Origin: Macrostomum lignano
Taxonomy: Eukaryota
Reading direction: 5' to 3'
Assembly (NCBI GenBank): GCA_002269645.1
Contig: NIVC01000067.1
Coordinates: 496,001 to 560,000, forward strand
Length of the DNA stretch: 64,000 nucleotides
Under the pieces are notes generated by a model, which made no database searches, had not been told where the DNA came from, and saw only the letters and a list, made by a program, of their open reading frames with translations. Positions 3,985 to 44,200 of this stretch are shown in pieces. A program made the position numbers and the translations under genes. Each line of letters begins with the position of its first letter. Positions within the stretch are counted from its first letter, which is position 1.

Positions 3985-6260
3985 AACGCGGGCTGGCCTG
4001 GGTCGCCTTATGCTCGGTGCACTCGGTGCTGCGATCTGAGGCTCTGGATGACGGGACAAGCTATTTCGAGCAGTTGTCGAGACTGTTCTGCTCTACAACC
4101 CTGACGCCGAACCCTGGACACTGACGGATGCCCTGGAGAAACAGCTGGACGCCACGCACTCTGCGATGCTGCGCTCTGCGTTCGACGTGCGCTGCGGCAG
4201 GGGTTCGAAGCCCAACGTCGAGCTCCTACTTACTTACTACCGACGGGGGGCAGAGCGCCGCGAATAGGCCGCGAGGCCCCTATCGCAACCCCAAGCTAAA
4301 ACACAGAAAGGCGTTAGCCTTGGGGCTGCGCCCACCCCTCGCCGGCAGCAGAAGAGCTCGCGAGAGTGGCGTCTGCGATCTTCATCCGTCCAGAATCCCG
4401 AACAAATGCGCGCAGGTCACGGATCCGGTCCGGAGTGGTGAGCTCGTCCAGCCTTCGCGGGTGACCGAGGTGATGTCTCCGCGCCTCGTTGAAGTGCGGG
4501 CAGAAAGTGACGTGGTGCGTCGAGGTTTCCTCCTCTAGATCACAGAATGGGCAGATAAAGGAGCAACCACTTTCAGTGAAATATGTCTCTGGAAGAAGCC
4601 ATGGCCAGTGATGACCATGCACATCTCCCTGAGGTCAGTTTTACTTAAGGAGATTAGATATTCGGATACTTTCCGGTTTATGACAGGCATTGCTATTCGC
4701 GTTTGCCGATATTCGGAGCAGCTGTTCCAGTGAACCTGGTGCTGGCGGTTCAGCCACTCTTGAATGGCGCGATTGACTGATGACTTCGGAGAAGGTAACT
4801 TGACTGGGCGTTGCGCTCCGCCGGGGTGCAACCCCGCTTGGCGAGTTAATCTACCAGCTCATTGCCGAGGATGTTGCTGTGGCCTGGTGTCCAGATAACA
4901 TTGATCCTGTTGAGAATCGCCAGGGTATGCAAGCTTTTGAGGCAGTCTGAAACTGACTTGGTTGAGAGCTTGATGGAAGACAAGGCCTTAATAGCGGCCT
5001 GGCTGTCAGAGTAAAAATTAATATCAAACTGCTGATGCCAGCTTGTGCAAATTTGCTCAGCGCACTGGTTGATGCCTACAACTTTGGATTGAAAAACCGA
5101 GACATTCTCACCAAGATGAAGACTCTCTTGTAAGATCGCTTCACCCTTGTGGAAAATGGCAATGCCCGCACCAGCGAGACCGTCACACAGGGATCCGTCA
5201 GTGAAGCAGTGAATACCCTGGCTTCTCCAGTTGATGCCCACGTCCAGTGGGTGGCTCCCTCGCGGCGGAAGGGTACACTTGAAGCCCTTCCTGAGGATGA
5301 AAGTGGGGGGTTTGCAGTCCACCTCGTCTAAATTGAGGTGGATGCGTTGAAGATCGCGACGGATGTAGTCCAGATGTGGGATGAGAGTCTTCCCGGGCAT
5401 GAAGCCCGAGGGCGTGTTAGCAATAAATTTATCACAAATGAGACGCGTGGCGCCCTTCATCGCCTCAGCTCTAATGAACAAATGCAGCGGAGGCATGCTG
5501 AGGATGGTGTTGAGCCCCTCGTAAGGGGTGGATGGATACGCACCGGTGATGGCACGGCAGATGTTACCCTGCAGCTGGTACAGCCGGTCCCGCACAGTCT
5601 TCAACTCCAACGCACTGGACCAGATAACACACACGCGTAGGTGATACTGGGTCGAATGATGCCGGTGTAGATCCACCTGACCGTCTTGGGAGATAGCCCC
5701 CAGGTAGGCCCGATGGCTCTCCTCACCTGCGCGAAGCAGCGCCTGGCGCGCCCGATGACATTGTCAGCGTGCTTGGTGCAACGCAGATCGTGAGTGAGCA
5801 TCACACCTAGATATTTTGTTTCCTTGACTAGGGGGATGTCCTTACCATAGCTGGTGAGGTTCCGCATGCTCCACTTCCGCTTCCTGGTGAAGATAATGGC
5901 CACCGTCTTAGCGGTGCTAATGGTTAGGCCGTGCCGGGTAGCCCAGGCTTGCGCCTTATCCGCGAACTGCTGCATCAAGCTTCGAAGGGTGCTGGTGTCA
6001 GGGCCACTGACAATAGCAGCGACATCATCAGTGTAGCCTGCCTTGACGATCCTGCTGGGGACGTCAGGCGTCAGGAGTTCGTCCATCACGAGATTCCAAA
6101 GCAGTGGGGTGAGCACCCCACCTTGGGCTCCGCCCAGCGTCGAGCTCTACGCTAGGGCCCGCCTAACGCGGCCTTCTGACCTGCTGCGCGAGAGGAGGCT
6201 ACTCAAGTTGGGGCTGGCCACGTCATCCAGTCAGAGAGTCGCTGTCGTGAGCCGTTACAC
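3985..6260 (+). mobile_element. RTE-like LINE RT C-terminal remnant, split by a younger LINE (pieces ~3985-4225 and 6148-~6260)
   Basis: Removing 4226-6147 rejoins LAWVAL...LFRAVVETVLLYNPDAEPWTLTDALEKQLDATHSAMLRSAF...[22 protein letters not shown], resembling the RTE thumb region (LFxAVVESVLLYGxETWTLT...NEELY...RERRL). Frameshifted. Confidence 0.7.
4226..6137 (-). mobile_element. 5'-truncated LOA/I-group LINE (RT C-half, RNase H, CCHC), frameshifted
   Basis: [25 protein letters not shown], RNase [32 protein letters not shown]...HHVTFCP. 3' tail (GTAA)n. 10-bp TSD CGTCGAGCTC at 4216-4225 and 6138-6147. Confidence 0.92.
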
Positions 6261-7457: not shown

Positions 7458-7932
7458 GGATTGCTAATCTATAGTCTACGGATTGCTAATCTATAGTCTA
7501 CGGATTGCTAATCTATAGTCCACGGATTGCTAATCTATAGTCCACGGATTGCTAGTCTATAGTCCACGGATTGCTAATCTATAGTCTACGGATTGCTAAT
7601 CTATAGTCTACGGATTGCTAATCTATAGTCCACGGATTGCTAATCTATAGTCCACGGATTGCTAATCTATAGTCCACGGATTGCTAATCTATAGTCTACG
7701 GATTGCTAATCTATAGTCTACGGATTGCTAATCTATAGTCCACGGATTGCTAATCTATAGTCTACGGATTGCTAATCTATAGTCTACGGATTGCTAATCT
7801 ATAGTCCACGGATTGCTAATCTATAGTCCACGGATTGCTAATCTATAGTCTACGGATTGCTAATCTATAGTCTACGGATTGCTAATCTATAGTCCACGGA
7901 TTGCTAATCTACAGTGAGTGGATTGCTAATCC
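7458..7932. repeat. 22-bp minisatellite (CGGATTGCTAATCTATAGTCYA)
   Basis: Direct tandem periodicity. Confidence 0.96.
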
Positions 7933-9304: not shown

Positions 9305-9401
9305 GTAAGTGAAGAGCCATTGGCTGTTTGAGAAACTGCCCAGGTAATTAGGGTTATAAGTACCTGGGTAAGGATTAAAATACTGAAGGGATTATGGATC
9401 A

Positions 9402-10470
9402 AAAGACTGAAATGATTAGGGATTAAGAGACAAAAGGGATTTGGGATTAAAAGACTGAAGGGATTTGGGATTAAAAGACTGAAGGGATTTGGGATTAAAA
9501 GACTGAAGGGATTTGGGATTAAAAGACTGAAGGGATTTGGGATTAAAAGACTGACGGGATTTGGGATTAAAAGACTGAAGGGATTTGGGATTAGAGACTG
9601 AAGGGATTTGGGATTAGAAGACTGACGGGATTTGGGATTAAAAGACTGACGGGATTTGGGATTAAAAGACTGAAGGGATTTGGAATTAAAAGACTGAAGG
9701 GATTTTGGATTAAAAGACTGACGGGATTTGGGATTAGAGACTGAAGGGATTTGGGATTAAAAGACTGAAGGGATTTGGGATTAAAAGACTGAAGGGATTT
9801 TGGATTAAAAGACTGACGGGATTTGGGATTAAAAGACTGACGGGATTTGGGATTAAAAGACTGAAGGGATTTGGGATTAAAAGACTGAAGGGATTTGGGA
9901 TTAAAAGACTGAAGGGATTTTGGATTAAAAGACTGACGGGATTTGGGATTAAAAGACTGACGGGATTTGGGATTAGAGACTGAAGGGATTTGGGATTAAA
10001 AGACTGAAGGGATTTGGGATTAAAAGACTGAAGGGATTTTGGATTAAAAGACTGACGGGATTTGGGATTAAAAGACTGACGGGATTTGGGATTAAAAGAC
10101 TGAAGGGATTTGGGATTAAAAGACTGAAGGGATTTGGGATTAGAAGACTGAAGGGATTTGGGATTAGAAGACTGAAGGGATTTGGGATTAGAAGACTGAC
10201 GGGATTTGGGATTAAAAGACTGACGGGATTTGGGATTAAAAGACTGAAGGGATTTGGGATTAAAAGACTGAAGGGATTTGGGATTAAAAGACTGACGGGA
10301 TTTGGGATTAAAAGACTGAAGGGATTTGGGATTAAAAGACTGAAGGGATTTGGGATTAAAAGACTGACGGGATTTGGGATTAAAAGACTGAAGGGATTTG
10401 GGATTAAAAGACTGAAGGGATTTGGGATTAAAAGACTGAAGGGATTTGGGATTCAAGGACTGAACGGATT
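9402..10470. repeat. 24-bp minisatellite (GGGATTTGGGATTAAAAGACTGAM)
   Basis: Direct periodicity; the variant GGGATTTTGG recurs at ~120-bp spacing. Confidence 0.97.
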
Positions 10471-10851
10471 TGCCAAAGGAGCTATTGATTGGGACACAAA
10501 CGGAATCAGGGAAAACTGAAAAGAGCTTTCGATCGAAACCGAGTGAAGGATAAAGTGCAGCAGAATGATGAATTTCCTAGTGACGCAGGACATGACGCCT
10601 GAATCCAGTAAACATGCGACTTGCCCAAAAACTGTTTTCTCCCCAGACTTGTCTTCTTCTGGTTGGGAGGACAGCATGACAGAGAAAGAGAAATAACAGA
10701 AACAGTGAATTCTCGCACAGAACCTTCCGTTTCCCACAAGATTCTCCTCCTTCAGCTGATGAAACAAGTTTGTTGCAACAAGAAAATTTCTAGTTTACAG
10801 CATTGCTTGGCTCTGCGCGTTTTGGCAAGAATAAAAATACATAAATAAAAA

Positions 10852-11868
<1,017 letters not shown>

Positions 11869-12779
11869 CCAGTTCCGCAATCCGATTAACCAGACCGGTT
11901 CAACTTGGTAGACAGGGATGAGTTTTCGCTCGCTAAGTCCGGCAGTCGCAGATGTTTCGCTTCCCGCCTGAAACGGCGACCCCCCGCAGGCGGCCCCACT
12001 TCCCATAAGCTCCGGCTAAGTGCCACATAAGGATAAGTCCGCGGCTCCAGGGTCAAGCCGCAGGTAAACATGTGTTTCTCTTCAAGCCAAGCTACATTTA
12101 GCAGACCAGAGGGAAACAAATTTGTTGCCGAACACTCGGCCAGGCAGCCCCGCAGGCGTCCTCTGCAGCTGCCAGTCACGGCCCGAAAACCCCTCTCCCC
12201 CTAGCAACGGCATCGCCCGGGCCTAACAAGCCCTGGCATAGTTTAGTCCTTCGTGAACTGCACTCCGCATTTCCCTGAAATCCCACAACCTGAGCAGAGA
12301 GGAAGGCGAAATCGGGATGACATTTTTAGACTGAATTATTTGCAGACTCCGCGCGGCCCGTCATCAACCCGGAATAATTGCAGGGATTGGGAGATGCGGA
12401 TTAGCTGAGCTCGAAGGGTTTAGGCAGGCAGGCAGGCAGGGCGGCACAGTGCATGCCCAATGCCAAACATTCGGCTCTCTCGCTTCTCGTTCCGCCGTTT
12501 CTCTTCCACTCTCGAAACACCCGGGCTGGGGGCAGGCAGCTTCCCGAGCAGTTAATTAGGGTAGAGGAGGGAGGTGGCGAGGAGTGTAACAGCTGGGTTG
12601 TAGACAGGAGACTGAAGCTCACCGCAACATGCGCGCCTTAATACCCTTCAATCTTGAGTACAACTTATGTCTATTAACTCAGCATTTCGATCGGGATTAA
12701 TGAGAATATTCCTGTGGCTCAATCCGCTACCTGGATTCTGAAAATTTGATAGTGATTCTCCCATACCTGCAGTCGGACC

Positions 12780-14745: not shown

Positions 14746-15050
<305 letters not shown>

Positions 15051-15170
15051 TCATCTTTGCAGTTGAACAAAAAGTCCCAGAAATTGCCTAGCTCAGTCGC
15101 AAATGTACCGTTCTCTTGCTGGGTGCAAGGCACTGATCAACCGAGGTCTCCACCCTCTCCGTCTTGCAGA

Positions 15171-20811: not shown

Positions 20812-21721
20812 TTATTCCAATTGACTTTGCATTAGATGGATAATATAAATTATTCCAATTGATTTTGCATTAGGTGGATAATATAAATTATTCCAATTGA
20901 TTTTGCATTAGGTGGATAATATAAATTATTCCAATTGATTTTGCATTAGTTGGATAATATAAATTATTCCAATTGATTTTGCATTAGGTGGATAATATAA
21001 ATTATTCCAATTGATTTTGCATTAGATGGATGATATAAATTATTCCAATTGATTTTGCATTAGATGGATGATATAAATTATTCCAATTGATTTTGCATTA
21101 GATGGATGATATAAATTATTCCAATTGATTTTGCATTAGGTGGATAATATAAATTAGTCCAATTGATTTTGCATTAGATGGATAATATAAATTATTCCAA
21201 TTGATTTTGCATTAGATGGATAATATAAATTATTCCAATTGATTTTGCATTAGATGGATAATATAAATTATTCCAATTGATTTTGCATTAGATGGATAAT
21301 ATAAATTATTCCAATTGATTTTGCATTAAATGGATAATATAAATTATTCCAATTGATTTTGCATTAGATGGATAATATAAATTATTCCAATTGATTTTGC
21401 ATTAGATGGATAATATAAATTATTCCAATTGATTTTGCATTAGATGGATAATATAAATTATTCCAATTGATTTTGCATTAGATGGATAATATAAATTATT
21501 CCAATTGATTTTGCATTAGATGGATAATATAAATTATTCCAATTGATTTTGCATTAGGTGGATAATATAAATTATTCCAATTGATTTTGCATTAGGTGGA
21601 TAATATAAATTATTCCAATTGATTTTGCATTAGGTGGATAATATAAATTATTCCAATTGATTTTGCATTAGGTGGATAATATAAATTATTCCAATTGATT
21701 TTGCACTAGATGGATAATATA
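20812..21721. repeat. 38-bp AT-rich minisatellite (AATTGATTTTGCATTAGATGGATAATATAAATTATTCC)
   Basis: Direct periodicity, ~24 copies. Confidence 0.97.
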
Positions 21722-22142
21722 CAAAATTGCAGAACCGAACGCCATGCGAAAGCAAGAGGAATTAAGAAGTGTCGCGCCAGTTTTGATTTCACGGGTGTCA
21801 AAAGGAGGAGATTCTACTACACATTTCAGGAGTTTTGTTGCAGGTATAATCTAGCTAGTGCTGATAGATTGATAGATTTTCAATCAAATCTGTCGCTATT
21901 GTTTATGTTTTAGTGCTTCTGTATTCGGATTGCTGTTGTTGAGTCTCTCGGGACGGCAAGCAAGTCTTCATGCTCAAAGCCAGATTTCAAGGGCAGCTTT
22001 TTCGCAGTACGGAAATCTTTAGGAAAGGCATTTGAGAAAGGTTGAGGCACTTACATTGTCCACTTACGCACGAGAGCTCGTTTCCAACAAAAACAACCTT
22101 TATAGATCAGATAAAAACTAGAATGCTCCTTGATTAGCCAAG

Positions 22143-22351
22143 GCATGCAAGGTGGGTTCAGCATGCCTGTGTAGCATGAGACAGACCAGGCCTACGAGCT
22201 AAGGTCTGCGATCCTACACACCTGCATCCCCTCTATTCTGGTGCAGGAATGGCAGGAGAACTGACTCCCAAGCTGACTCGCAAGCCGACCCAGGGGTTCA
22301 CGCCCCGCATGTGTTCAAGGCAGCCCTAGGGCTGCTGGACTGACTAGGCTC
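22143..22351 (+). ncRNA. Candidate HDV/CPEB3-like self-cleaving ribozyme at LINE 5' end
   Basis: P1 GCATGC 22143-8 / GCATGT 22307-12 (G1.U wobble); P3 GGG/CCC around L3 TTCACGC; GT; P4 GCAGCC-CTAG-GGCTGC; J4/2 CTGA (C22340); P2 GACCCAG 22287-93 / CTAGGCTC 22344-51 (imperfect). Confidence 0.7.
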
Positions 22352-22726
22352 CGGCGGCGGCAACCCATCCGTGGCCTTTTGGCCAAGTTGGGTACGGGCT
22401 CCGCCCGGAAGTGAACCTGTGCGTATCAGGTACCTCTGGCCACGGCTCTGAGGATGTGGCAGGGTATGCGGCCAGTCCGCAGGCTCCGGAGGCAGTCCTC
22501 CTGCTTCCCTCAAGGGCCCAGTGTAGTACCGTGCTGATGGTCCTTTGGTTCGGCCTCTGGTTTTTCCAAGCCGGGCTCTTAGCCGGGGAGTTTCTCGGTT
22601 GCTAGCGGTCGGGCCGGTACGGGCTTAAGCCACCCCCCGGTCGCTACCTCTTGGTCTGGCTGTTGGGTTTGGGGTTACGGCCCAGCGGCTTCTCACCTCT
22701 AGTCCCCACTCGCCTTTCAGCGACTC

Positions 22727-24196
22727 ATGGAGTATTCATTTACACCTAACACGTCCGAGGCTGCTGGAGCACCAACCGAGGTTGGCACCGCGGCTCAGCC
22801 GGACATTCGCAACACCGGAACCTCCGGTGCCTCTCAATCTGCCGCTGCCGCCGCTCAGGATAATACCGGAGTGGCTGGACAAGACAGCGGACCTCAGATT
22901 TCGAAAAAGAAGGCCCGTAGCATTGCTCGCTACAAAGCCTTTCTCCAGCGCAAAGCAGAGGAACGGAGGAATGCGAAAGCCGCCCCTCCGGCCACCTCTG
23001 AGGAGGGTGCCGGTAACTCTGCGAACCCCGCGGAGGAGCCGACATCCGACAAGGGGGTGGACCCCGCGCGCCGGTCTGATGCGTCAGATGCCGCCGAAGC
23101 TCCTGGTGCGGCTGGCCCCTCCCGTGATCGGACCTCTGCCCGTGTGGAAGCTCCCACGGCTGTGGAGGGATCCAAAGCGGGGGGCGCTGGCCAAACCACA
23201 AAGCCGAAGCGAACCTACGCGGCTATGGCCAAGAGGCAGCCGGCCCTGGTTATCCAAGGCCAGGAGACGCCTCTTACGGCCGAACAGCTCGACCTTATCT
23301 GGCTCAGGTTGGACTCCCACCTGGTCAAGATGGCCTTGAGCGGCACTATCATTCGAGTCCAAAAAACGAAAGTCGAGGACAAAGCCCTCTATATCCAGCC
23401 CGCCGATAGCCAGTCAGGACAGCAGCTCCTCGAGCTGCTGAAAACCTTCGACTGGGGTACGGAGCTGGAGAACCTGTTCATCTACAGGGAGGACGAGCGA
23501 TCCCGGACACACCGGCACCGTGCCTGGATTCCGGCTCGCAGCTGCATCACCAAGGCCGACGAGCTGCGTCACCTGCTAGTGGCTTCCAACCCGGAGCTAC
23601 CGGCCAATGGTGTCGTAGTTCACGAGACCATCTCCAAGCCGGGCGGAGACGGTTTCACGGCTATTCTTGGACTGTCGGATAGCTGGATGCTCCGCTATCC
23701 GGACATTTCCATCATCTCTGTCGGGCTGTTGCAGATTCAGCTCTTTCGCTTTGAGTCTGACGCCACCCGCCCACCGCCCCCGGAGAAGCGTAAGCGGGTG
23801 ATCGGGGGCTCTGCCGGGCGGAAACGCCCAGGAAAAGAAGCTCCCGGTCGTCACGACCCCTCCGAGGACGTGGACCCTGTCAGAGGGAAAGCCGCGAAAG
23901 CTGCAGCAACAGGCGGACGTGGAAAGGGCCGGAAACCCGCCCGGAACACTATCCGCTCTGGTCTGACTCAGCGCGCGAAGCAGCTGCTGGACACCGCCAA
24001 GGCCCCAACCGCAGCCACCCCAGCCCAGTGTCACCACTGCGCCCCCCCCCCGGAAAACCGGGCCGAGAGCGAGAATGCCACCCAGGTAGCGACATCGCCC
24101 TCGACCATGGAATCCATCCGGGAGGAGCCCATGGAGCTGGAGCCTGGAGCTATCGGCGAGGCAGAAGAGGCAGCTCTCCTGCACAACTCGCCTTGA
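22727..24196 (+). CDS. LINE ORF1 (489 aa)
   Basis: Intact ORF: low-complexity N-terminus, TYAAMAK, central folded region with HRAWIP (reminiscent of LOA-type ORF1), basic C-terminus. No canonical CCHC knuckle seen. Confidence 0.85.
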   Translation: MEYSFTPNTSEAAGAPTEVGTAAQPDIRNTGTSGASQSAAAAAQDNTGVAGQDSGPQISKKKARSIARYKAFLQRKAEERRNAKAAPPATSEEGAGNSANPAEEPTSDKGVDPARRSDASDAAEAPGAAGPSRDRTSARVEAPTAVEGSKAGGAGQTTKPKRTYAAMAKRQPALVIQGQETPLTAEQLDLIWLRLDSHLVKMALSGTIIRVQKTKVEDKALYIQPADSQSGQQLLELLKTFDWGTELENLFIYREDERSRTHRHRAWIPARSCITKADELRHLLVASNPELPANGVVVHETISKPGGDGFTAILGLSDSWMLRYPDISIISVGLLQIQLFRFESDATRPPPPEKRKRVIGGSAGRKRPGKEAPGRHDPSEDVDPVRGKAAKAAATGGRGKGRKPARNTIRSGLTQRAKQLLDTAKAPTAATPAQCHHCAPPPENRAESENATQVATSPSTMESIREEPMELEPGAIGEAEEAALLHNSP

Positions 24197-24199
24197 GCC

Positions 24200-27942
<3,743 letters not shown>

Positions 27943-28703
27943 CTGCCCGTGGTCGCCAGGGGCTAGCGAAATGGGCGGCAACGCCTCCTCGCTGTTTCCG
28001 GACGCACGGAGCCCCCTGCAGCTAAGTCAAGTCAAGTTGATTAGCCAAGTGTTTCTTCCCACGCATTTATCAATGAGTTTCTTATCAATACTCGATAGCT
28101 TATGCTTAAAATTTTTAAGGCTTTAGTAGCCATGCACCTATTAATTCAATCGAGCCACATCATATCAACTATAATTAAGCTGTCAAGAGCAACGGTCTAT
28201 TCATGTTGTCTGTAATGATGAAGCACGGAGTTACTGCATGGCTGCTGCTATAGCTATTGTGGTTGTTAGCTGCAGGGTCTTTTGTTATTTTGATGTTGTT
28301 TCTTTCTTGGCAGAAAGAATCCTTCGAGATCGAAGGACATCCTCCCAGCGTACACATGGGGATGACTTGATCCCAGGATGGAATTGTAGGCGATCGTATC
28401 TATAAGCCCGAGAATTTTTTTGGCCGCGTCTAGGACCACTGACAATACTCGAGCGTAAGTCTTTCGAATGGGACAGTTAAGGCTGATTGAAACTGTCATC
28501 GAATAAAGCCATCAAACCACATTGACTGATGTACAAAAGAATGCAAGTGGATGTAAAAGTCGTGTGATGACACGAAATTTGGCATTATTGGATGGCAGTG
28601 TGAACGTTGAACGGGGAAGGGGCGTCAGAGTCCATAGCTAATTGTTCCTATCGGTACCACGAATATAAGCACCCGAGAATATAGGGCAAACCTATGTGAA
28701 CTA

Positions 28704-30522: not shown

Positions 30523-32374
30523 GCGTTTCAAGCTAAGAGGCGCGTCTCCAGCCTACTTGGACAGACTAAGCAATCAAATCAGGCATCGGCAATGATTAAA
30601 TCAAGTTTTATTTCAAAGCAATCTATAACACTTTTCTGGCGGCAGGTCCAGCGGAAGAAATCGATAACCAATAAATAGACACAACAGCGGCGATTTCTGT
30701 GTTTAAAACTCGAGCGTATCTCAGAACTGTTATTCAATGTCAAAAAAGTCAATAAACTGGCTGTAGCAAACCTAATAAATTATGATGTGAGCCTTCGCTT
30801 TCAATTAATTTTATATACATACGCCTGCTTTGCTGAATAAATCATACGGGCTACGGATGAGGTGTGTTTGGTGCCTGGTAGTCTGTAGTCTGTCCTTCAT
30901 CTGTTTTGCTTTTATTCTTTCAGTCATTCAGGACTTCAAATCTTCTGAACGAGCGCATTTTTGGCACTTCTAAATGAATAAATAAGTAGCTACTTGAGTA
31001 GTATCCAATTCTGAACTGTCTGGCCTACCCAAATATGCGCGCCGTTGGTTTATCTACGAGTATTATATTTTAAAATATAGCTTTCAATTGTTGTCTCTCT
31101 GGGTCGTCGGTCAGTGCCACTGAAATATGAATATCATCATTGTCTAGGTATTTTTAAATCGCTTTTTGTCCCGTCTCAATATTCACAAACATATATCTGT
31201 ATCTGTCTAGGAAAAACCCATTAGCTAGGTCTCTGGTCTCGGCTCTGTAACGACAGACAGTTATAAGTAGTCGTTACTGGGACAATCAATACAAACCGTA
31301 CGTACGTGTCCTTTAAGACGCCGAATGTGGTGGCGGCTCTATACTTGGAATTCGCAAGGATGACAGCTTTACCCAACAATCATTGATCTAGGAAGGCGGT
31401 TCTGATCTACTTGGTGAGCTGAGAAGGCGGCTGTGCAGTGATATACATCTTACTCAGAGATATGGCAGGACGGGAACTCTTCGTTAATAATCTGGCAAGC
31501 TGGTTAAAGAAATTTCGGCTTTTTAGCCAAAGTTACAGCCGAGTTACTAACGTCCGCTCAAGGTTTGTGTCTATTCTCAGCTCCCTTCTCTATATTCTCC
31601 TTTCTCCTCTCTCTTTTCTCCTCTTTCCTTCTCTTCTCTACTTTCTCTCCTATACTTTTCTTTACCATCTCATCTCTTTTCTCACGTCCTCTCCTCCACT
31701 CTCCCCTCCTCTGGCCTGCAGTCATGCGCTATGTTCTCTATCTGGCCCTGGAGGTAAAAAAGATTGCCGACGCCTGCAATAAGCCATACGCTAATACCGA
31801 CAGCCCCAATTTAAATTGATTGTCACCACACCGATTTTAAAGACTCCCACAGACTCCTCGGTAGCAGCAGCAAGCGACGCTGTGTTCAAGCAAACTTGCC
31901 CTTGTTCCCGTACGATAAGCAAACACAAAACGGATGCCCTTGCTCACTCAAACAATCGCTATTGGACAATGGGAATTTATTTCATTTAGCGGAGAAAATT
32001 TCCAGAGTCAGTTCTTTTACACGCGGGCTACGCCGAAGGAAAAGCTGAAATGGAAACGGGACTCTATATGCTGCAGCGCTCATTTTGCTCATTAGCTAGC
32101 TCATTGAAAAATTCAAATCCCATGGCCTATTTGCAGGAGGCAAAGCTAAGCTAAACATGGAATTAGATAAGAGAATTTCAAACGAAACGCATTCAAGCGA
32201 CATCGTTACACGGCTGGCAAACACAACACAATTATACCTATTTATAGTTTCTGAGAAAGCAATTCTGAAATTCTGAACAGCGAAGCGACATCGACTTCTT
32301 CGTCAGGGTATGTACACTGACTATATTTTAGGGCTCTAAACTTTATATTCTTTCTAATGCCCGGCTTTTATTTT

Positions 32375-33735
32375 TACTCCCCGCTTCCACTTTCTACTCC
32401 CCGCTTCCCTTTCTACTCCCCGCTTCCCTTTCTACTCCTCGCTTCCTCTTTCTACTCCCCGCTTCCCTTTCTACTCCCCGCTTCCCTTTCTACTCCACGC
32501 TTCCCTTTCTACTCCCCGCTTCCCTTTCTACTCCCCGCTTCCCCTTTCTACTCCCCGCTTCCCCTTTCTACTCCCCGCTTCCCTTTCTACTCCCCGCTTC
32601 CCTTTCTACTCCCCGCTTCCCCTTTCTACTCCCCGCTTTCCTTTCTACTCCCCGCTTCCACTTTCTACTCCCCGCTTCCCTTTGTACTCCCCGCTTCCTC
32701 TTTCTACTCCCCGCTTCCCTTTCTACTCCCCGCTTCCCTTTCTACTCCCCGCTTCCCTTTCTACTCCCCGCTTCCCCTTTCTACTCCCCGCTTCCCCTTT
32801 CTACTCCCCGCTTCCCTTTCTACTCCCCGCTTCCCCTTTCTACTCCCCGCTTCCCTTTCTACTCCCCGCTTCCTCTTTCTACTCCCCGCTTCCCTTTCTA
32901 CTCCCCGCTTCCCCTTTCTACTCCCCGCTTCCCCTTTCTACTCCCCGCTTCCCCTTTCTACTCCCCGCTTCCCTTTCTACTCCCCGCTTCCCCTTTCTAC
33001 TCCCCGCTTCCACTTTCTACTCCCCGCTTCCCTTTGTACTCCCCGCTTCCTCTTTCTACTCCCCGCTTCCCTTTCTACTCCCCGCTTCCCTTTCTACTCC
33101 CCGCTTCCCTTTCTACTCCCCGCTTCCCCTTTCTACTCCCCGCTTCCCCTTTCTACTCCCCGCTTCCCTTTCTACTCCCCGCTTCCCCTTTCTACTCCCC
33201 GCTTCCCTTTCTACTCCCCGCTTCCTCTTTCTACTCCCCGCTTCCCTTTCTACTCCCCGCTTCCCCTTTCTACTCCCCGCTTCCCCTTTCTACTCCCCGC
33301 TTCCCCTTTCTACTCCCCGCTTCCCTTTCTACTCCCCGCTTCCCCTTTCTACTCCCGCTTCCCTTTCTACTCCCCGCTTCCCTTTCTACTCCCCGCTTCC
33401 CTTTCTACTCCCCGCTTCCCCTTTCTACTCCCCGCTTCCCCTTTCTACTCCCCGCTTCCCTTTCTACTCCCCGCTTCCCTTTCTACTCCCCGCTTCCCCT
33501 TTCTACTCCCCGCTTCCCTTTCTACTCCCCGCTTCCTCTTTCTACTCCCCGCTTCCCCTTTCTACTCCCCGCTTCCCTTTCTACTCCCCGCTTCCCTTTC
33601 TACTCCCCGCTTCCCTTTCTACTCCCCGCTTCCCTTTCTACTCCCCGCTTCCCCTTTCTACTCCCCACTTCCCTTTTCTACTCCCCACTTCCCCTTTCTA
33701 CTCCTCACTTCTACTTTCTACTTACTACTTCTTAC
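32375..33735. repeat. 19-20 bp pyrimidine-rich minisatellite (CTACTCCCCGCTTCCC(C)TTT)
   Basis: Direct; ORFs 32357-33825 are by-products. Confidence 0.97.
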
Positions 33736-38296: not shown

Positions 38297-41200
38297 ATGT
38301 CGCAGCCAAATCCCGGATTCTTGAGATCTCTGTTTGCGACAATTCTACTGCTGACTATTGCGGCATCTGCGGCTAAGTCGCAAACTATCAAGATTGGTAG
38401 GGAAAACTTTCAATTGCTGATCCTTTTACTGCCGAAAATGTTTTTTATCTAGAAAAACTACTAACCAGCTTCTCTAAGAAACACAGCGCTCCCCCTTCGT
38501 CCAATTCAGCATCAAATCTTTACATTCCCAAGAGGTTGGAAATAACGAAGCCCGACGAGGCGCGAAGACAATTATTATTGGGCGAATAAATTATTATATA
38601 GATAAATTTTCTGATCGGTTTTTGATCTCGAACGAGCTCGTGAGATTATTGCCGCTGGCCTGCACTGTCACGAATTTTGCGACAGCAGGACCTGCTCTGT
38701 GCGAATCCGGGATTAGCGCTCGACAAGGCGCTTCTTTTGCGCTGCTGCAGGGCCTTTTCTAGTGGGATAATTTCTTTCCCCTTCCAGCCCCCTTGCCAGC
38801 CCCGATGGCCAGGCGGGTTGAAGGCAGCTCATCTGGAAACTGGGCCAAACAGACGAATACAGCGGTGCCAATAATGAATTACAACCTGGAGGCGCAGTCG
38901 CAATTCAAAACGCTCGCCAACCGGAAAGACGAACGCCGTTCTCGCTCTGTTTTGCGCTATTATTTTTCCTGGAAAAGATGGGGGGAGAAAAAAAACGCAC
39001 GCCCCCGGTCCGACTGGCACCGATTCAAGTCGCGTCCGGATCCCCGGATTTATTTTAATTTATTGAAGAAAATTTGGCATTCAGTATTTTGCAAAATTTA
39101 TTGCTTCTGGGGCGTTTGCATAGCGCGATGAGTCCGAATGAGGAACACGTTTGCGCGGTAACTGAGCTATCTTTCGAGGCTTTGAGCCATGATTTTATAA
39201 CCCTCCGACCCGAATGCAGGTGTGCACAACGATGTGAAGATTTTGAACTCTCTAACCAGCTTGAACAGTTCCGAGGTGGCCAGATTATTCAACATCACTT
39301 TTATAAATGTCAGCAGTTTCCATTTAGGCCCCGACCCGGAGACTCTGGTCCAGGTGCGCTCCTGTAAGTTTCTGTCGTGCTTTCAAATGCAAACCTTTTC
39401 AGAGGGCCTAAGGGAAAACACAGGAGTGTCACACAAAGTAGAAACAGCTGGGTGTCACTAGAAACAGCTGGGTGTCACTAGAAACAGCTGGGTGTCACTA
39501 GAAACAGCTGGGTGTCACTAGAAACACAGGGGTGTCACTAGAAACACAGGGGTGTCACTAAAAACAGCTGGGTGTCACTAAAAACAGCTGGGTGTCACTA
39601 GAAACAGCTGGGGGTCATTAGAAACAGCTGGGTGTCACTAGAAACAGCTGGTTTCACTAGAAACAGCTGGGTGTCACTAGAAACAGCTGGTTTCACTAGA
39701 AACAGCTGGGTGTCACTAGAAACAGCGGGGTGTCACTAGAAACAGCAAGGTGTCACTAGAAACACAGGGGTGTCACTAGAAACACAGGGGTGTCACTAGA
39801 AACACAGGGGTGTCACTAGAAACACAGGGGTGTCACTAAAAACACAGGGGTGTCACTAGAAACACAGGGGTGTCACTAAAAACACAATGGTGTCACCAGA
39901 AACACAGGGGTGTCACTAGAAGCACAGTGGTGTCACTAGAAACACAGGGGTGTCACTAAAAACACAGGGGTGTCACTAGAAACACAGGGGTGTCACTAAA
40001 AACACAGGGGTGTCACTAAAAACACAGGGGTGTCACTAGAAACACAGGGGTGTCACTAAAAACACAGGGGTGTCACTAGAAACACATGGGTGTCACTAGA
40101 AACACAGGGGTGTCACTAAAAACACAGGGGTGTCACTAAAAACACAGGGGTGTCACTAAAAACACAATGGTGTCACTAGAAACACAGGGGTGTCACTAGA
40201 AACACAGGGGTGTCACTAAAAACACAGGGGTGTCACTAGAAACACAGGGGTGTCACTAGAAACACAGGGGTGTCACTAAAAACACAGGGGTGTCACTAGA
40301 AACACAGGGGTGTCACTAAAAACACAATGGTGTCACTAGAAACACAGGGGTGTCACTAGAAACACAGTGGTGTCACTAGAAACACAGGGGTGTCACTAGA
40401 AACACAGTGGTGTCACTAGAAACACAGGGGTGTCACTAGAAACACAGGGGTGTCACTAAAAACACAGGGGTGTCACTAGAAACACAGGGGTGTCACTAAA
40501 AACACAATGGTGTCACTAGAAACACAGGGGTGTCACTAGAAACACAGGGGTGTCACTAAAAACACAGGGGTGTCACTAGAAACACAGGGGTGTCACTAGA
40601 AACACAGGGGTGTCACTAAAAACACAGGGGTGTCACTAAAAGCACAGGGGTGTCACTAAAAACACAGGGGTGTCACTAAAAACACAGGGGTGTCACTAAA
40701 AGCACAGGGGTGTCACTAAAAACACAGGGGTGTCACTAAAAACACAGGGGTGTCACTAAAAACACAGTTGAGTGTCACTAGAAACAGCGGGGTGTCATTA
40801 GAAACAGCTGAGGTGTCACTAGAAACAGCTGGGGTGTCACTAGAAACACAGGGGTGTCACTAGAAACACAGTGGTGTCACTAAAAACACAGGGGTGTCAC
40901 TAGAAACACAGGGGTGTCACTAAAAACACAGGGGTGTCACTAGAAACACAGGGGTGTCACTAAAAACACAGGGGTGTCACTAGAAACACAGTGGTGTCAC
41001 TAAAAACCCAGGGGTGTCACTAGAAACACAGGGGTGTCACTAGAAACACAGGGGTGTCACTAGAAACACAGGGGTGTCACTAAAAACACAGGGGTGTCAC
41101 TAGAAACACAGGGGTGTCACTAAAAACACAGGGGTGTCACTAGAAACACAGGGGTGTCACTAGAAACACAGGGATGTCACTAAAAACACAGGGATGTCAC

Positions 41201-44200
41201 TAAAAAGCAGCGCAATTGTGAGAGAGGAATTTTCAGGAAAGAATCGCGAGGGACGAATTGTCAGAGAGGAATTGTCAGAGAGTAATTGTCAGATAGGAAT
41301 TGTCAGGGAGAATTTGTCAGAGAGTTTCATGCAATGTTCAACTGTGAAGCAGCTGGTCACACCGACAAACTTTGGTCAGACTTGGAATCGGTCAGGTCGA
41401 ACCCGCCGCACCTGATCATCGGCGGCTACAATGGCACAGTGTCAGCCATTGCCAGCGAGCTGGGCATTCCGTACTATTGCACCAGCCCGAGCCATCAGAG
41501 CCCGCTGCTGATGGACGCAACCTACCTGAATGCCAGCTCGCTGCTGCTCATGAACTCTTACATGGAAGACATGATTGCGGCGGCCCAGCAGCTCACTAAC
41601 TCCATCATTCAGCGGCAGGCTTTGATTGTGGTTACCGATGACATCAGTGACAGTGAGTGATAAGTGTTTAACAATCATGAGTGAGAGTGCTCTGGGTGAC
41701 AGTGTCCTGAGTGACAGTGTCCTGAGTGACAGTGTCCTGAGTGATAGTGTCCTGAGTGACAGTGTCCTGAGTGACAGTGTCCTGAGTGATAGTGTCCTGA
41801 GTGACAGTGTCCTGAGTGACAGTGTCCTGAGTGACAGTGTCCTGAGTGACAGTGTCCTGAGTGACAGTGTCCTGAGTGACAGTGTCCTGAGTGACAGTGT
41901 CCTGAGTGACAGTGTCCTGAGTGACAGTGTCCTGAGTGACAGTGTCCTGAGTGACAGTGTCCTGAGTGACAGTGTTCTGAGTGACAGTGTTCTGAGTGAC
42001 AGTGTCCTGAGTGACAGTGTCCTGAGTGACAGTGTTCTGAGTGACAGTGTCCTGAGTGACAGTGTTCTGAGTGACAGTGTTCTGAGTGACAGTGTCCTGA
42101 GTGACAGTGTCCTGAGTGACAGTGTCCTGAGTGACAGTGTCCTGAGTGACAGTGTTCTGAGTGACAGTGTCCTGAGTGACAGTGTTCTGAGTGACAGTGT
42201 CCTGAGTGACAGTGTTCTGAGTGATAGTGTCCTGTGTGAGTGTGGTGATTATGCATAACTATTCAGAGTTTATGATTAATTATGCCAATTCGCAATGGTT
42301 CCAGGCGTGAACTTCCTGCTGAACTCGCTGTCCGACCAGGCCCTGCACATGGTACTTCTGAACGGTTCTATTCGCGATTCGCTGTACAATGCCAGTCTTA
42401 AATTCAACATTAGCTCGGCAGTGTTCCAGACAATGTTCACGTCCGACCTCATGCTCGAGGCCCTACTGCCTGAAGTGAGCGGCACTCTGGTTACAATACG
42501 GGGGTGTTGAATAGCAAAGAATACTCGTAACAATACGTATCGTTAGTGAATCAAATTATTAAATAATAACTAGTCACAATCACACACCACTTCTTCAGGC
42601 TGCCCGGCTGAGTCTAATGAAAAATGTATCGTTCTGGATCATCACAGACTTGGTGAGTGACTATGAGATGTGCTCAGTCTCTAACCCAAGCCCCCGTCTT
42701 AAATAGAAAGTAATTCCTCTGTCTTAAGTCATGACAATGACCTTCATTGTGTTGCTGTGTTCGGTTGTCGCGGAAAAAGCAATCAAATTACAAATTCCAC
42801 TCCGCTCCCGCAGTTTCCCAACAGCAGTCAGCTGCTGGCGTACCGCAGAACGGGCTGCACAATGTTCTCCTTTGCGCTGCAGTCTGCAGCGTCCAATGTG
42901 ACGAGTCCTGATGCCCTGACGCTGGCGATGGCGCAGGACGCAATTAATCACTACCTGAAGGTGGTCGATGGTGGCCGTTTGTCATTCGATCTGTCGAGAG
43001 CGCTATTGGTAAACAAATAACTGTACAATCTCTGAATTCCTGTTTATTTAATTGGTTCCAACGCTTGTAAACGCATAAAAGCAATAAATATCCAACTCAG
43101 ACGAGCTACAATGGAATACTGGGCCAACTGCACTTTAGTTCCGGCACCAGACGGAATTTGTACAGCCAGCTCAATACAATGATGACGTCATACAGGCTTC
43201 CCTACTTGGAAGAGGTGATGCATGAGGCTTGTGTTGTAAATTTGCGATTCTGGCTTCTGATCTTTAGCTCCTCCGCTGGTTTCACAACCAAGCCACCAGA
43301 TACCCAACCAAGCCACCAGATCCCCAACCCAGCCACCAGATCCCCAACCAAGCCACCAGATCCCCAACCAAGCCACCAGATCCCCAACCAAGCCACCAGA
43401 TCCCCAACCAAGCCACCAGATCCCCAACCCAGCCACCAGATCCCCAACCAAGCCACCAGATCCCCAACCAAGCCACCAGATCCCCAACCAAGCCACCAGA
43501 TCCCCAACCCAGCCACCAGATCCCCAACCAAGCCACCAGATCCCCAACCAAGCCACCAGATCCCCAACCCAGCCACCAGATCCCCAACCCAGCCACCAGA
43601 TCCCCAACCAAGCCACCAGATCCCCAACCCAGCCACCAGATCCCCAACCCAGCCACCAGATCCCCAACCAAGCCACCAGATCCCCAACCAAGCCACCAGA
43701 TCCCCAACCAAGCCACCAGATCCCCAACCAAGCCACCAGATCCCCAACCAAGCCACCAGATCCCCAACCAAGCCACCAGATCCCCAACCAAGCCACCAGA
43801 TCCCCAACCCAGCCACCAGATCCCCAACCAAGCCACCAGATCCCCAACCAAGCCACCAGATCCCCAACCAAGCCACCAGATCCCCAACCCAGCCACCAGA
43901 TCCCCAACCAAGCCACCAGATCCCCAACCAAGCCACCAGATCCCCAACCAAGCCACCAGATCCCCAACCAAGCCACCAGATCCCCAACCAAGCCACCAGA
44001 TCCCCAACCAAGCCACCAGATCCCCAACCCAGCCACCAGATCCCCAACCAAGCCACCAGATCCCCAACCAAGCCACCAGATCCCCAACCAAGCCACCAGA
44101 TCCCCAACCCAGCCACCAGATCCCCAACCAAGCCACCAGATCCCCAACCAAGCCACCAGATCCCCAACCCAGCCACCAGATCCCCAACCCAGCCACCAGA

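What the first reader, a model, noticed from the sequence alone, without database searches (positions are those of the whole stretch)
22143..22351. CPEB3/HDV-like self-cleaving ribozyme whose cut site coincides with the 5' boundary of a LOA-like LINE
Seen: the TSD ends at 22142, so the element starts at G22143. GCATGC (22143-8) pairs with GCATGT (22307-12), giving a G1.U wobble at the first position. In HDV order downstream: P2 5' GACCCAG (22287-93), P3 GGG, L3 TTCACGC, CCC, P1', GT, P4 hairpin GCAGCC-CTAG-GGCTGC, J4/2 CTGA with candidate catalytic C22340, and P2' CTAGGCTC. Established: the mammalian CPEB3 ribozyme has L3 UUCACGU and GU after P1' (single-pair P1.1), HDV-like ribozymes cut 5' of a G1.U wobble, and they process the 5' ends of several non-LTR clades (R2, RTE, L1Tc, Baggins). 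Inference: this element frees its own 5' end from read-through host transcripts using a ribozyme with a large (~138-nt) structured J1/2 insert. P2 is imperfect (one C.A mismatch, one bulge), so this copy may be impaired.
Basis: partly seen in the sequence, partly recalled or inferred. Interest (0 to 1): 0.9.

Follow-up and report, generated by a model that had tools for sequence, protein, structure and literature searches.

The report
HDV-like ribozyme heading a flatworm LINE
The first 209 bases of a full-length but dead LINE retrotransposon (probably from the flatworm Macrostomum) have the fold of a hepatitis-delta-type self-cutting RNA whose cut site is exactly the element's first base; relatives keep the same fold, so it is a real but already familiar kind of device.

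Summary

From this copy alone the fit is only moderately unlikely: 0.4% of anchored shuffles give an equivalent fold once the L3 U...G rule is added. The comparative evidence is what carries it.
- The closest relative (Logan contig L001; ORF1 47% identical) keeps P1, P1.1, P2, P3 and P4 at homologous positions, with compensatory changes. Its contig starts exactly at G1.
- Four more distant lineages of the same LINE group (L015/L025/L049, L010, L019; ORF2 about 33% identical) have the same architecture 376-396 nt upstream of ORF1.
- In L015/L025/L049 the unrelated flanks end at G1, and 97% of pair cells stay paired, with four compensatory pairs.

So the family carries a 5'-terminal HDV-like ribozyme with a large structured J1/2 domain (105-188 nt).

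The window copy is the most deviant member. It has a one-pair P1.1, a C.A mismatch and a bulge in P2, and two extra bases before the catalytic C. Its ORF2 has at least three frameshifts.

No cleavage was tested. Rfam and my own covariance models miss it, but they also miss clean relatives. This is a new member of a known kind.

The parts
22130..22142 (+). 5' copy of the 13-bp target-site duplication TTGATTAGCCAAG
   Evidence: Identical to 28037-28049. It defines G22143 as the first base of the element.
22143..28036 (+). Full-length LINE, 5894 bp: 5' UTR, ORF1, ORF2 (APE, RT, RNase H), and a short (AAGTC)-type 3' tail at 28020-28036
   Evidence: TSD. Pfam finds Exo_endo_phos_2, RVT_1 and RNase_H. 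ORF2 is 69-79% identical to the intact ORF2 of L001 but split over three frame changes.
22143..22148 (+). P1 5' strand GCATGC. The predicted cut is 5' of G22143.
   Evidence: Six pairs with 22307-12, the first being G.T. The homologous GCCTGC/GCAGGC in L001 carries an A-T to C-G double change.
22149..22286 (+). J1/2 peripheral domain, 138 nt. It starts with AA and folds as a closed multi-branch domain.
   Evidence: RNAfold results. Consensus fold with L001 gives 33 pairs, 10 of them with both sides changed. Relatives have 105-188 nt here.
22176..22212 (+). Most conserved block of the whole 5' UTR: a hairpin inside J1/2 (stem around GACC/GGTC, loop AGGCC.A.G.GCTAA)
   Evidence: Nearly invariant between the window and L001, with compensatory changes in the stem. 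Function unknown.
22287..22293 (+). P2 5' strand GACCCAG
   Evidence: Pairs with 22344-51, giving six pairs, one C.A mismatch and one bulge. The homologous helix in L001 is perfect (CTCAGA/TCTGAG) with one double change relative to the window.
22294..22306 (+). P3 (GGG/CCC) with the 7-nt loop L3 TTCACGC
   Evidence: Three G-C pairs. L3 has U at position 1 and G at position 6 (the reverse-wobble positions) and C22299 for P1.1. Pattern shared with relatives: TCTCCGT, TCTACGT, TCCACGTT, GCCACGT.
22307..22312 (+). P1 3' strand GCATGT
   Evidence: Follows P3' directly, as in HDV-like ribozymes.
22313..22314 (+). P1.1 bases GT. G22313 pairs with C22299; T22314 faces T22298.
   Evidence: Relatives have two pairs here (AG or GG with CT or CC of L3), including a compensatory T-A to C-G change.
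22315..22339 (+). P4 domain: TCAA, then hairpin GGCAGCC-CTAG-GGCTGCT, closed by C22316-G22338 and T22315-A22339
   Evidence: The N(1-2)AA motif before P4 is present in all seven related sequences.
22340..22343 (+). J4/2 CTGA, with C22340 the predicted catalytic cytosine
   Evidence: It aligns by architecture with CTGC (L001), CTGA (L015), CTAA (L025, L049), CCAA (L010) and CTAG (L019). In every relative the C follows a single G after P4.
22344..22351 (+). P2 3' strand CTAGGCTC (3' end of the ribozyme)
   Evidence: The position is homologous to P2' of L001.
22388..22393 (+). Alternative P2' TTGGGT. It gives a perfect 6-bp P2 with ACCCAG, with J4/2 CCAAG (C22383 or C22384) and a much larger P4.
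   Evidence: Found by the strict descriptor. It is not at the homologous position in L001, so it is judged secondary.
22727..24196 (+). ORF1, 489 aa, no Pfam domain
   Evidence: Best matches are Macrostomum lignano gene models (63-82% overall, near-identical in blocks) and L001 ORF1 (47%).
24247..27918 (+). ORF2 remnant, with frame changes near 25076-25113, near 25911-25918 and between 27422 and 27523
   Evidence: tblastn of the intact L001 ORF2 against the window.
28037..28049 (+). 3' copy of the target-site duplication

Best explanation
Window 22143-22351 is the 5'-terminal HDV-like (double-pseudoknot) self-cleaving ribozyme of a two-ORF, APE-type LINE.

Proposed mechanism:
1. The element is transcribed as part of a longer host or read-through transcript.
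2. P1 (22143-48 with 22307-12) places the bond 5' of G22143 in an active site built from P3/L3, the one-pair P1.1, P4 and J4/2. C22340 acts as the general acid/base.
3. A 138-nt self-contained J1/2 domain holds P1 and P2 together.
4. Cleavage leaves an RNA that begins exactly at G22143. This is why a full-length insertion starts at that base, right after the target-site duplication.

Shown here: the boundary, the fold, and its conservation with covariation in relatives.

Inferred: catalysis, the role of C22340, and the activating role of J1/2.

This copy is a decayed descendant. ORF2 has at least three frameshifts, P2 has a C.A mismatch and a bulge, P1.1 has one pair, and there are two extra bases before the catalytic C. 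Its own activity is uncertain, roughly even odds, even though the family's ribozyme is very likely real.
For: 1. Boundary. The 13/13 TSD places the 5' end at G22143.

2. Fold. All elements are present in HDV order. Unconstrained minimum-energy folds of the window and of L001 recover P1, the closed J1/2 domain, P3 and P4.

3. Closest relative, L001. Its 5' UTR is 61% identical.
- P1 is GCCTGC/GCAGGC, an A-T to C-G double change relative to the window.
- P1.1 is CT/AG, versus C-G only in the window.
- P2 is CTCAGA/TCTGAG, perfect, with one C-G to T-A double change relative to the window.
- P3 is identical and P4 is longer.
- The contig starts exactly at G1.

4. Lineage L015/L025/L049. L025 and L049 were found by BLAST homology, not by a structure search.
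- 97.3% of pair cells form standard pairs, against 34-61% when partners are slid.
- Four pairs have changes on both sides: three in P2 and one in P1.1.
- Sequence upstream of G1 is unrelated in the three insertions.

5. L010 and L019 have the same architecture. L019 was found by a covariance model that does not contain P1 (E = 2.6e-4). Its only 7/7 complement to P1' upstream lies 188 nt before P2.

6. Features I never required are nevertheless shared.
- J1/2 starts with AA in six of the seven sequences.
- N(1-2)AA precedes P4.
- A G precedes the catalytic C.
- J4/2 reads C-Y-R-N.
- G1 lies 376-584 nt upstream of ORF1 on the coding strand.

7. Specificity of the family descriptor over 1.13 Mb (both strands).
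- The strict form hits only the true sites.
- Allowing one P2 mismatch adds the window site, with G1 = 22143 uniquely, plus two chance hits.

8. Precedent.
- About a third of active R2 ribozymes have mismatches in the first five P2 pairs, and P1/P1' spacings of 23 to over 700 nt occur (PMC3774820).
- Structured J1/2 domains speed HDV-like ribozymes up by about 1000-fold (PMC4908430).
Against: - No cleavage assay or RNA-end data exist.
- Rfam gives no HDV-family hit at gathering threshold or at E <= 10.
- Covariance models trained on the distant relatives do not find the window core. Both tools also miss clean relatives, so these negatives weigh little.
- This copy departs from every relative in three places: a one-pair P1.1, a broken P2, and GGA instead of G before the catalytic C.
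- J4/2 is CUGA rather than the C-N-A-A type of HDV.
- Only one close homologue of the 5' UTR could be retrieved, so the family consensus in the host genome is unknown.
- L010 and L015 were first picked by a structure descriptor, so their pairing is partly guaranteed by how they were selected.
- A precise transcription start at G1 would also explain the boundary.
Confidence: 0.8

Rival explanations
1. The region is a conserved, structured 5' UTR element, for example a protein-binding pseudoknot or an internal ribosome entry structure. It resembles the HDV fold but does not cut. The 5' end is set by something else.
For: - The whole 5' UTR, not just the ribozyme part, has conserved blocks between the window and L001.
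- The best-conserved block lies in J1/2, outside the catalytic core.
- No known-family model recognises the region.
Against: - The parts that matter only for catalysis are kept in lineages whose ORF1 proteins are no longer recognisably similar. These are a C directly after P4, U and G in L3, P1.1, a 3-bp P3 abutting P1', and P1 starting at the element's first base.
- R2 shows that protein binding, translation and cleavage roles coexist in one RNA (PMC6765202).
Confidence: 0.08
2. The element starts at G22143 because an internal promoter starts transcription there, as in several insect LINEs. The HDV-like fold in this copy is a chance fit found by a flexible search.
For: - Loose HDV descriptors hit often in GC-rich sequence: about 0.4 per kb, and 5.9% of anchored shuffles.
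- A contig starting at G1 (L001) fits a transcription start as well as a cut.
Against: - With the L3 rule only 0.4% of anchored shuffles fit.
- The fold recurs at the homologous place in L001 with compensatory changes, and in four further lineages.
- The first bases (GCATGC, GCCTGC, GGGGGGG, GGTGATC, GGGCGCG) share no initiator-like motif, yet each is complementary to its own P1' strand.
Confidence: 0.04
3. The ribozyme is real, but in this copy it closes with the downstream P2' TTGGGT (22388-93), using C22383 or C22384 in J4/2 (CCAAG). The whole stretch 22315-22382 then serves as an enlarged P4.
For: This is the only arrangement in the window copy with a perfect 6-bp P2, and it passes the strict descriptor. 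Its J4/2 (CAAG) has the two adenines typical of HDV.
Against: - L001 cannot form it. Its equivalent sequence CCGGGT does not pair with CTCAGA.
- GGGTAC is conserved for another reason: it can pair with the conserved GTACC at 22430-34.
Confidence: 0.1
4. The family has a working ribozyme, but this copy is a catalytically dead relic.
For: - It has a C.A mismatch and a bulge in P2, a one-pair P1.1, and two extra bases before the catalytic C. None of these is seen together in any relative.
- It fails the strict family descriptor.
- ORF2 carries at least three frameshifts, so mutations have accumulated.
Against: - Each defect alone is tolerated in known ribozymes. A one-pair P1.1 occurs in CPEB3. 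P2 mismatches occur in about a third of R2 ribozymes (PMC3774820). L019 also has a C.A mismatch in P2.
- All core positions are intact.
Confidence: 0.45

Closest known systems
R2 retrotransposon HDV-like ribozymes (Eickbush and Eickbush; PMC3774820)
   Same: - Double-pseudoknot ribozyme in the 5' UTR of a non-LTR element.
- Frees the element RNA from a co-transcript.
- P1 and P1' are separated by a long J1/2 (23 to over 700 nt).
- P2 is often imperfect and P4 is variable.
- Few positions are invariant: the catalytic C and the L3 G/U.
   Different: - R2 is a single-ORF, restriction-like-endonuclease element fixed in 28S rDNA and transcribed by Pol I, and many R2 ribozymes cut upstream in the 28S sequence.
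- This element has two ORFs with an APE endonuclease and RNase H, inserts at a non-rDNA site with a 13-bp TSD, and is predicted to cut exactly at its own first base.
Baggins (a LOA-clade element by my own knowledge) and RTE ribozymes (Ruminski et al. 2011, cited in PMC3774820 and PMC6765202)
   Same: APE-type LINEs without a proven promoter of their own, carrying a 5'-terminal HDV-like ribozyme that cuts at the element's 5' end.
   Different: I could not obtain those sequences (PMC3308841 is not held), so there was no direct comparison of core or J1/2. The host here is a flatworm or unknown aquatic eukaryotes rather than insects.
drz-Agam-2-1 and other large HDV-like ribozymes with a structured J1/2 (P1.2) domain (PMC4908430)
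   Same: A stable, self-contained domain between P1 and P2 is predicted to bring the two helices together. The window, L001, L015 and L010 all fold J1/2 into a closed domain.
   Different: The J1/2 here is larger and multi-branched (105-188 nt). It contains a hairpin whose loop is nearly invariant between two lineages, which hints at a further role.
Mammalian CPEB3 ribozyme
   Same: L3 TTCACGC matches UUCACGU at 6 of 7 positions. The Cpeb3 sequence is confirmed by a primer in PMC10919898. From my own knowledge of CPEB3, it also has a single C-G P1.1 pair next to a U/U and a G.U first pair.
   Different: - CPEB3 is a compact, single-copy intronic ribozyme with no J1/2 insert and no link to a retroelement.
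- The nearest relative of the window element has a different L3 (TCTCCGT) and a two-pair P1.1, so the likeness is convergence within a small sequence space, not kinship.
- The Rfam CPEB3 model gives no hit.
L1Tc ribozyme of Trypanosoma cruzi (PMC3185411, PMC3383444)
   Same: An HDV-like ribozyme at the first bases of an APE-type LINE with RNase H, acting co-transcriptionally.
   Different: L1TcRz is compact (the first 77 nt) and overlaps an internal promoter. Here the ribozyme spans 209 nt, and no promoter function was tested.
Twister-variant ribozymes of Schistosoma mansoni non-LTR elements (PMC8501958)
   Same: A flatworm LINE using a self-cleaving RNA for its own processing.
   Different: A different ribozyme class and fold.

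Membership tests
HDV-like self-cleaving ribozymes | Nested double pseudoknot in the order P1, J1/2, P2, P3, L3, P3', P1', P1.1, P4, J4/2, P2' | tested here: met
   All elements lie at 22143-22351 in that order. The nested part is recovered by unconstrained folding.
HDV-like self-cleaving ribozymes | Cleavage site 5' of a G that opens a P1 of about 6-7 bp, with the first pair usually G.U | tested here: met
   G22143.T22312 opens a 6-bp P1. Relatives have G-C (L001, L015, L019, L025, L049) or G.U (L010). Cleavage itself was not tested.
HDV-like self-cleaving ribozymes | 3-bp P3 closed by a 7-8-nt L3 with the conserved U and G (reverse wobble), followed at once by P1' | tested here: met
   GGG-TTCACGC-CCC-GCATGT, with U at L3 position 1 and G at position 6. 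The importance of the L3 G is described in PMC3774820.
HDV-like self-cleaving ribozymes | P1.1: one or two pairs between L3 and the bases after P1' | tested here: met
   One pair, C22299-G22313. There are two pairs in all six relatives, with a compensatory change.
HDV-like self-cleaving ribozymes | Catalytic cytosine at the start of J4/2, directly after P4 | tested here: met
   C22340 follows the extended P4. A C is in the equivalent place in all relatives. Its chemical role was not tested.
HDV-like self-cleaving ribozymes | P2 of at least 5 bp abutting P3 | tested here: inconclusive
   The window has six pairs, one C.A mismatch and one bulge. Relatives have 6-10 pairs, and L019 has one C.A mismatch. 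Mismatches occur in about a third of R2 ribozymes (PMC3774820).
HDV-like self-cleaving ribozymes | Helices supported by covariation among homologues | tested here: met
   - Window versus L001: double changes in P1 and P2, and a change in P1.1.
- L015/L025/L049: 97.3% of cells paired, four compensatory pairs, slid controls 34-61%.
HDV-like self-cleaving ribozymes | Match to a curated Rfam model of the family (HDV, CPEB3, drz-Agam and others) | tested here: not met
   No hit at gathering score or at E <= 10. The same search misses the clean relatives L015, L010 and L001. Those models do not allow a 100-190-nt J1/2, so the failure says little.
HDV-like self-cleaving ribozymes | Mg2+-dependent self-scission giving a 5'-OH and a 2',3'-cyclic phosphate | not testable with these tools
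   Needs an in vitro transcription/cleavage assay.
LOA-clade LINEs | ORF2 with APE endonuclease, reverse transcriptase and C-terminal RNase H, plus a separate ORF1 | tested here: met
   Pfam finds Exo_endo_phos_2, RVT_1 and RNase_H in that order. ORF1 lies upstream and has no Pfam domain. Several other clades (I, R1, Tad1, Ingi) share this layout.
LOA-clade LINEs | Reverse-transcriptase phylogeny placing the element with LOA/Baggins | not tested

The most novel reading that the evidence does not exclude
The large J1/2 domain may be more than a clamp for P1 and P2. It may be a second functional module, such as a binding site for the element's own proteins or a translation or promoter element, fused into the ribozyme. 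Its hairpin at 22176-22212 has a loop that is almost invariant between two lineages whose ORF1 proteins are only 47% identical. On this reading, the ribozyme-plus-domain unit would be ancestral to a widespread group of RNase-H-bearing LINEs of flatworms and other aquatic eukaryotes. That would give a natural system in which RNA processing and particle assembly are coupled in one fold.
Probability: 0.25. Interest if true: 0.55.

Novelty: new member of a known kind. Interest (0 to 1): 0.4.

Why it matters
It adds a flatworm LINE, and at least four related lineages seen only in metagenomes, to the list of retrotransposons that define their own 5' end with an HDV-type ribozyme.

It shows that this solution, with a 105-188-nt structured J1/2 domain, has been kept while ORF1 diverged beyond recognition.

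For annotation, it gives a precise marker of full-length 5' ends in a very repeat-rich genome.

For ribozyme biology, it offers a set of natural variants for testing sequence tolerance and the role of peripheral domains. The variants include G-C versus G.U at the cut site, one versus two P1.1 pairs, J4/2 reading CUGA, CUAA, CCAA, CUAG or CUGC, and C.A mismatches in P2.

It does not change the known picture of how such elements work.

Tried and rejected
- Rfam at gathering threshold on the whole window, and at E <= 10 on 22050-22450, found no HDV-family hit. The same was true for the clean relatives, so the result is uninformative.
- Other copies in the window: only a 154-bp 3' fragment at 46465-46617, so there are no other 5' ends to compare.
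- Exact look-up of the window ORF1 and of the M. lignano UniRef model found nothing on record. The contig of the 56%-identical ORF2 relative P0005 has no DNA available.
- A profile search with the conserved ORF1 core gave one short fragment only.
- A DNA pattern from the conserved J1/2 block, scanned against JGI metagenomes, gave 0 hits.
- N-termini of the M. lignano gene models were tried as a proxy for other copies' 5' UTRs. They join the element only about 3 codons before the ATG, so they are useless for this.
- Loose structure descriptors produced hundreds of chance hits and were dropped as evidence.
- Hits L069, L053, L040 and the window minus strand near 62604-62850 lack P2 and P4, and were judged chance.
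- L071 and L078 share only downstream UTR sequence with L010 and have no ribozyme.
- Covariance models R1 and R2, built from distant relatives, recover their own lineages and found L019. They miss both L001 and the window even with filters off. MAFFT could not align the two P3 types (GGG/CCC and ACC/GGT) correctly, so no joint model was built.
- An alternative 5' hairpin was considered: GCATGC with the second GCATGC at 22163-68, and GCCTGC with GCAGG in L001. In L001 that segment forms the closing helix of the J1/2 domain, and the minimum-energy folds prefer the long-range P1.
- Sample accessions were searched in the literature to learn whether L001 is from RNA or DNA. Nothing was found.
Full report
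**1. What is in the sequence**

The stretch 22143-28036 is GC-rich (58-63%) and sits in AT-rich, minisatellite-laden DNA. It is flanked by a perfect 13-bp direct repeat, TTGATTAGCCAAG, at 22130-42 and 28037-49. The bases after the two repeat copies differ (G22143 versus T28050), so the 5' end of the insertion is fixed at G22143.

- The element has a 584-nt 5' UTR.
- ORF1 is 489 aa and has no Pfam domain.
- ORF2 has Exo_endo_phos_2, RVT_1 and RNase_H domains.
- It ends in a short AAGTC-type repeat tail.

Against the intact ORF2 of its closest relative, the reading frame changes at least three times: near 25076-25113, near 25911-25918, and between 27422 and 27523. This copy is therefore dead.

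ORF1 is near-identical in blocks to transposon-derived parts of Macrostomum lignano gene models. The host is most likely that flatworm or a close relative.

**2. The observation**

| Element | Coordinates | Sequence and pairing |
|---|---|---|
| P1 | 22143-48 with 22307-12 | Six pairs, first is G.T |
| J1/2 | 22149-22286 | 138 nt |
| P2 | 22287-93 with 22344-51 | Six pairs, one C.A mismatch, one bulge |
| P3 | 22294-96 with 22304-06 | GGG/CCC |
| L3 | 22297-22303 | TTCACGC |
| P1.1 | C22299 with G22313 | One pair |
| P4 | 22320-35 | Hairpin |
| J4/2 | 22340-43 | CTGA, starting with C22340 |

I add two points. TCAA precedes P4, and P4 can be extended so that it fills the whole space between P1.1 and C22340.

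Unconstrained RNAfold recovers P1, a closed J1/2 domain, P3 and P4.

**3. Is it more than chance?**

Loose HDV descriptors are not specific. They hit about 0.4 times per kb in this kind of sequence.

I fixed G1 at the TSD boundary and shuffled the next 420 nt 3000 times:

| Rule set | Shuffles that fit |
|---|---|
| Rules loose enough to admit this fold | 5.9% |
| Plus the L3 U...G rule | 0.4% |
| Plus a perfect 5-bp P2 | 0.1% |

The copy alone is therefore suggestive, not decisive.

**4. Relatives**

*Closest relative.* A protein search with ORF1 found a 6.5-kb Logan contig, L001 (ORF1 47% identical, ORF2 69-79%). Its 5' UTR aligns with the window over its whole length at 61% identity. At the homologous positions it has:
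- P1 GCCTGC/GCAGGC, an A-T to C-G double change.
- P3 GGG/CCC and L3 TCTCCGT.
- P1.1 AG pairing with CT of L3, two pairs, one of them a T-A where the window has C-G.
- GCAA, then an 11-bp P4, then G, then CTGC.
- A perfect P2, CTCAGA/TCTGAG. One of its pairs (T-A) corresponds to a C-G pair in the window, and its C-G pair corresponds to the window's C.A mismatch.

The contig begins exactly at G1 but runs about 500 nt past the element's 3' end. That pattern suits a transcript with a defined 5' end. I could not find out whether the sample is RNA or DNA.

*More distant relatives.* An ORF2 profile scan of metagenome contigs returned 80 loci encoding relatives at 28-36% identity. Among them:
- L015 and L067 are the same element in two contigs. 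They have P1 GGGGGGG/CCCCCCC, a 133-nt J1/2, P2 of 8-10 perfect pairs, P3 ACC/GGT, L3 TCTACGT, P1.1 AG, then TAA, P4 CTGCAG-GAGA-CTGCAG, G, and CTGA.
- L025 and L049 were found only by BLAST similarity to the J1/2 of L015, so they are free of structural selection. On their alignment with L015, 97.3% of pair cells are standard pairs (34-61% for slid controls). Four pairs change on both sides: three in P2 and one in P1.1. Sequence upstream of the G run is unrelated in the three insertions. G1 is therefore the element's first base there too.
- L010 has P1 GGTGATC/GATCACT (G.U first), P2 CGTACT/AGTGCG, P3 ACC/GGT, L3 TCCACGTT, P1.1 GG, then TTAA, an 8-bp P4, G, and CCAA.
- L019 was found by a covariance model of the 3' core only (27.8 bits, E = 2.6e-4 in 0.9 Mb). 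The P1 5' strand is not part of that model. It is the only 7/7 complement upstream (GGGCGCG 157-163). P2 has eleven positions with one C.A mismatch, and J4/2 is CTAG.

*Position and divergence.*
- In L010, L015 and L019, G1 lies 376-396 nt upstream of ORF1. In the window and L001 it lies 584 and 547 nt upstream. In all cases it is on the coding strand.
- The ORF1 proteins of L010 and L015 are not detectably similar to the window's. The RNA architecture has therefore outlasted ORF1 similarity.

*Shared details I did not select for.*
- AA follows P1 directly in six of the seven sequences.
- N(1-2)AA precedes P4.
- A G precedes the catalytic C.
- J1/2 folds as a closed domain.

*Descriptor specificity.* A descriptor built from these features hits only the true sites in 1.13 Mb (both strands) when P2 must be perfect. 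If one P2 mismatch is allowed, it adds the window site, with G1 = 22143 uniquely, plus two chance hits.

**5. How it most likely works**

By analogy with R2, baggins, RTE and L1Tc (PMC3774820, PMC6765202, PMC3185411), the element is transcribed within a longer RNA. The ribozyme folds and cuts 5' of G1, and the released RNA starts at the first base of the element.

The structured J1/2 domain probably acts as shown for large HDV-like ribozymes, bringing P1 and P2 together (PMC4908430).

Shown here: the boundary, the fold, its conservation and its covariation. Inferred: catalysis, the role of C22340 and the role of J1/2.

**6. This particular copy**

It is the most deviant of the seven sequences. 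P1.1 has one pair, P2 is interrupted, GGA stands where the others have G before the catalytic C, and it fails the strict family descriptor.

Each deviation has precedent:
- CPEB3 has a one-pair P1.1 (my own knowledge).
- A third of R2 ribozymes have P2 mismatches (PMC3774820).
- L019 has a C.A mismatch in P2.

Together, and in a copy with a broken ORF2, they make its present activity uncertain.

A perfect alternative P2' exists at 22388-93. It is not conserved in L001, so I treat it as secondary.

**7. Negative results and their weight**

Rfam finds nothing, but it also finds nothing in L015, L010, L019-type relatives or L001. Its HDV-family models do not allow a 100-190-nt J1/2.

My models R1 and R2, trained on the ACC/GGT-P3 lineages, miss the window and also miss the clean L001. 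This negative is likewise uninformative.

**8. Comparison with what is known, and novelty**

This is the known mechanism of HDV-like ribozymes at the 5' ends of non-LTR retrotransposons, with a known variation (a long, structured J1/2).

New here:
- The host group. I found no paper linking Macrostomum, retrotransposons and ribozymes.
- The set of related metagenomic lineages.
- The strongly conserved hairpin inside J1/2.

The likeness of L3 and P1.1 to CPEB3 is real (PMC10919898) but not shared by the nearest relative, so it is convergence. 'LOA-like' is consistent with the domain order but was not tested.

**9. Verdict**

This is a new member of a known kind, with interest 0.4.

Noticed in passing
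window 1-64000 (for example 1-743, 7458-7931, 9372-10472, 20812-21721, 32371-33722, 39439-41206, 43285-44244, 46649-47653, 53523-55932): The window holds about 30 separate minisatellite arrays with periods of 15-72 bp, many over 90% regular. It also has a 1-kb (ACAG)n tract at 10855-11872 and a (CTAT)n tract at 14747-15056. Together they cover a large share of the 64 kb.
   Followed up: no
window 4377-6134, minus strand: A second, different LINE fragment. Its RT-to-RNase-H region is 34-45% identical to residues 631-1212 of the L001 ORF2, spread over three frames. It is 5'-truncated or decayed.
   Followed up: no
window 46465-46617, minus strand: A 154-bp fragment 86% identical to the last 170 bp of the element (27869-28022). 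It is probably an old, heavily 5'-truncated copy of the same family.
   Followed up: no
window 22390-22395, 22427-22437, 22517-22536, 22626-22637: Downstream of the ribozyme, the 5' UTR keeps further blocks identical to L001: GGGTAC, CAGGTACCTCT, CCCAGTGT...CGTGCTG and TAAGCCACCCCC. GGGTAC can pair with GTACC. This suggests more conserved RNA structure, or a translation or promoter signal, between the ribozyme and ORF1.
   Followed up: partly
L001 1-6492: The Logan contig of the closest relative starts exactly at the predicted cleavage-site G but continues about 500 nt beyond the element's 3' end, into sequence with ORFs on the opposite strand. This asymmetry would fit an assembled transcript with a processed 5' end, but the library type is unknown.
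   Followed up: partly
window minus strand, about 62604-62850 in plus-strand coordinates: A core-like motif GAG-TCCTCGC-CTT-GCGGGC-GG, whose L3 matches my recollection of the HDV genomic ribozyme, with a complementary GTCCGC 240 nt upstream. It has no convincing P2 or P4 and was judged a chance match.
   Followed up: partly
L019 352-432 and 157-163: This metagenomic relative has a C.A mismatch inside an otherwise 10-pair P2, the same kind of defect as in the window copy. C.A in P2 may therefore be tolerated in this family.
   Followed up: partly
L015 2730-2799: Part of the J1/2 domain of L015 gives a sub-threshold Rfam match to the bacterial int-alpA RNA (28.3 bits against a gathering score of 35.8, E = 0.058). 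This is almost certainly a chance likeness between two small branched hairpins.
   Followed up: no
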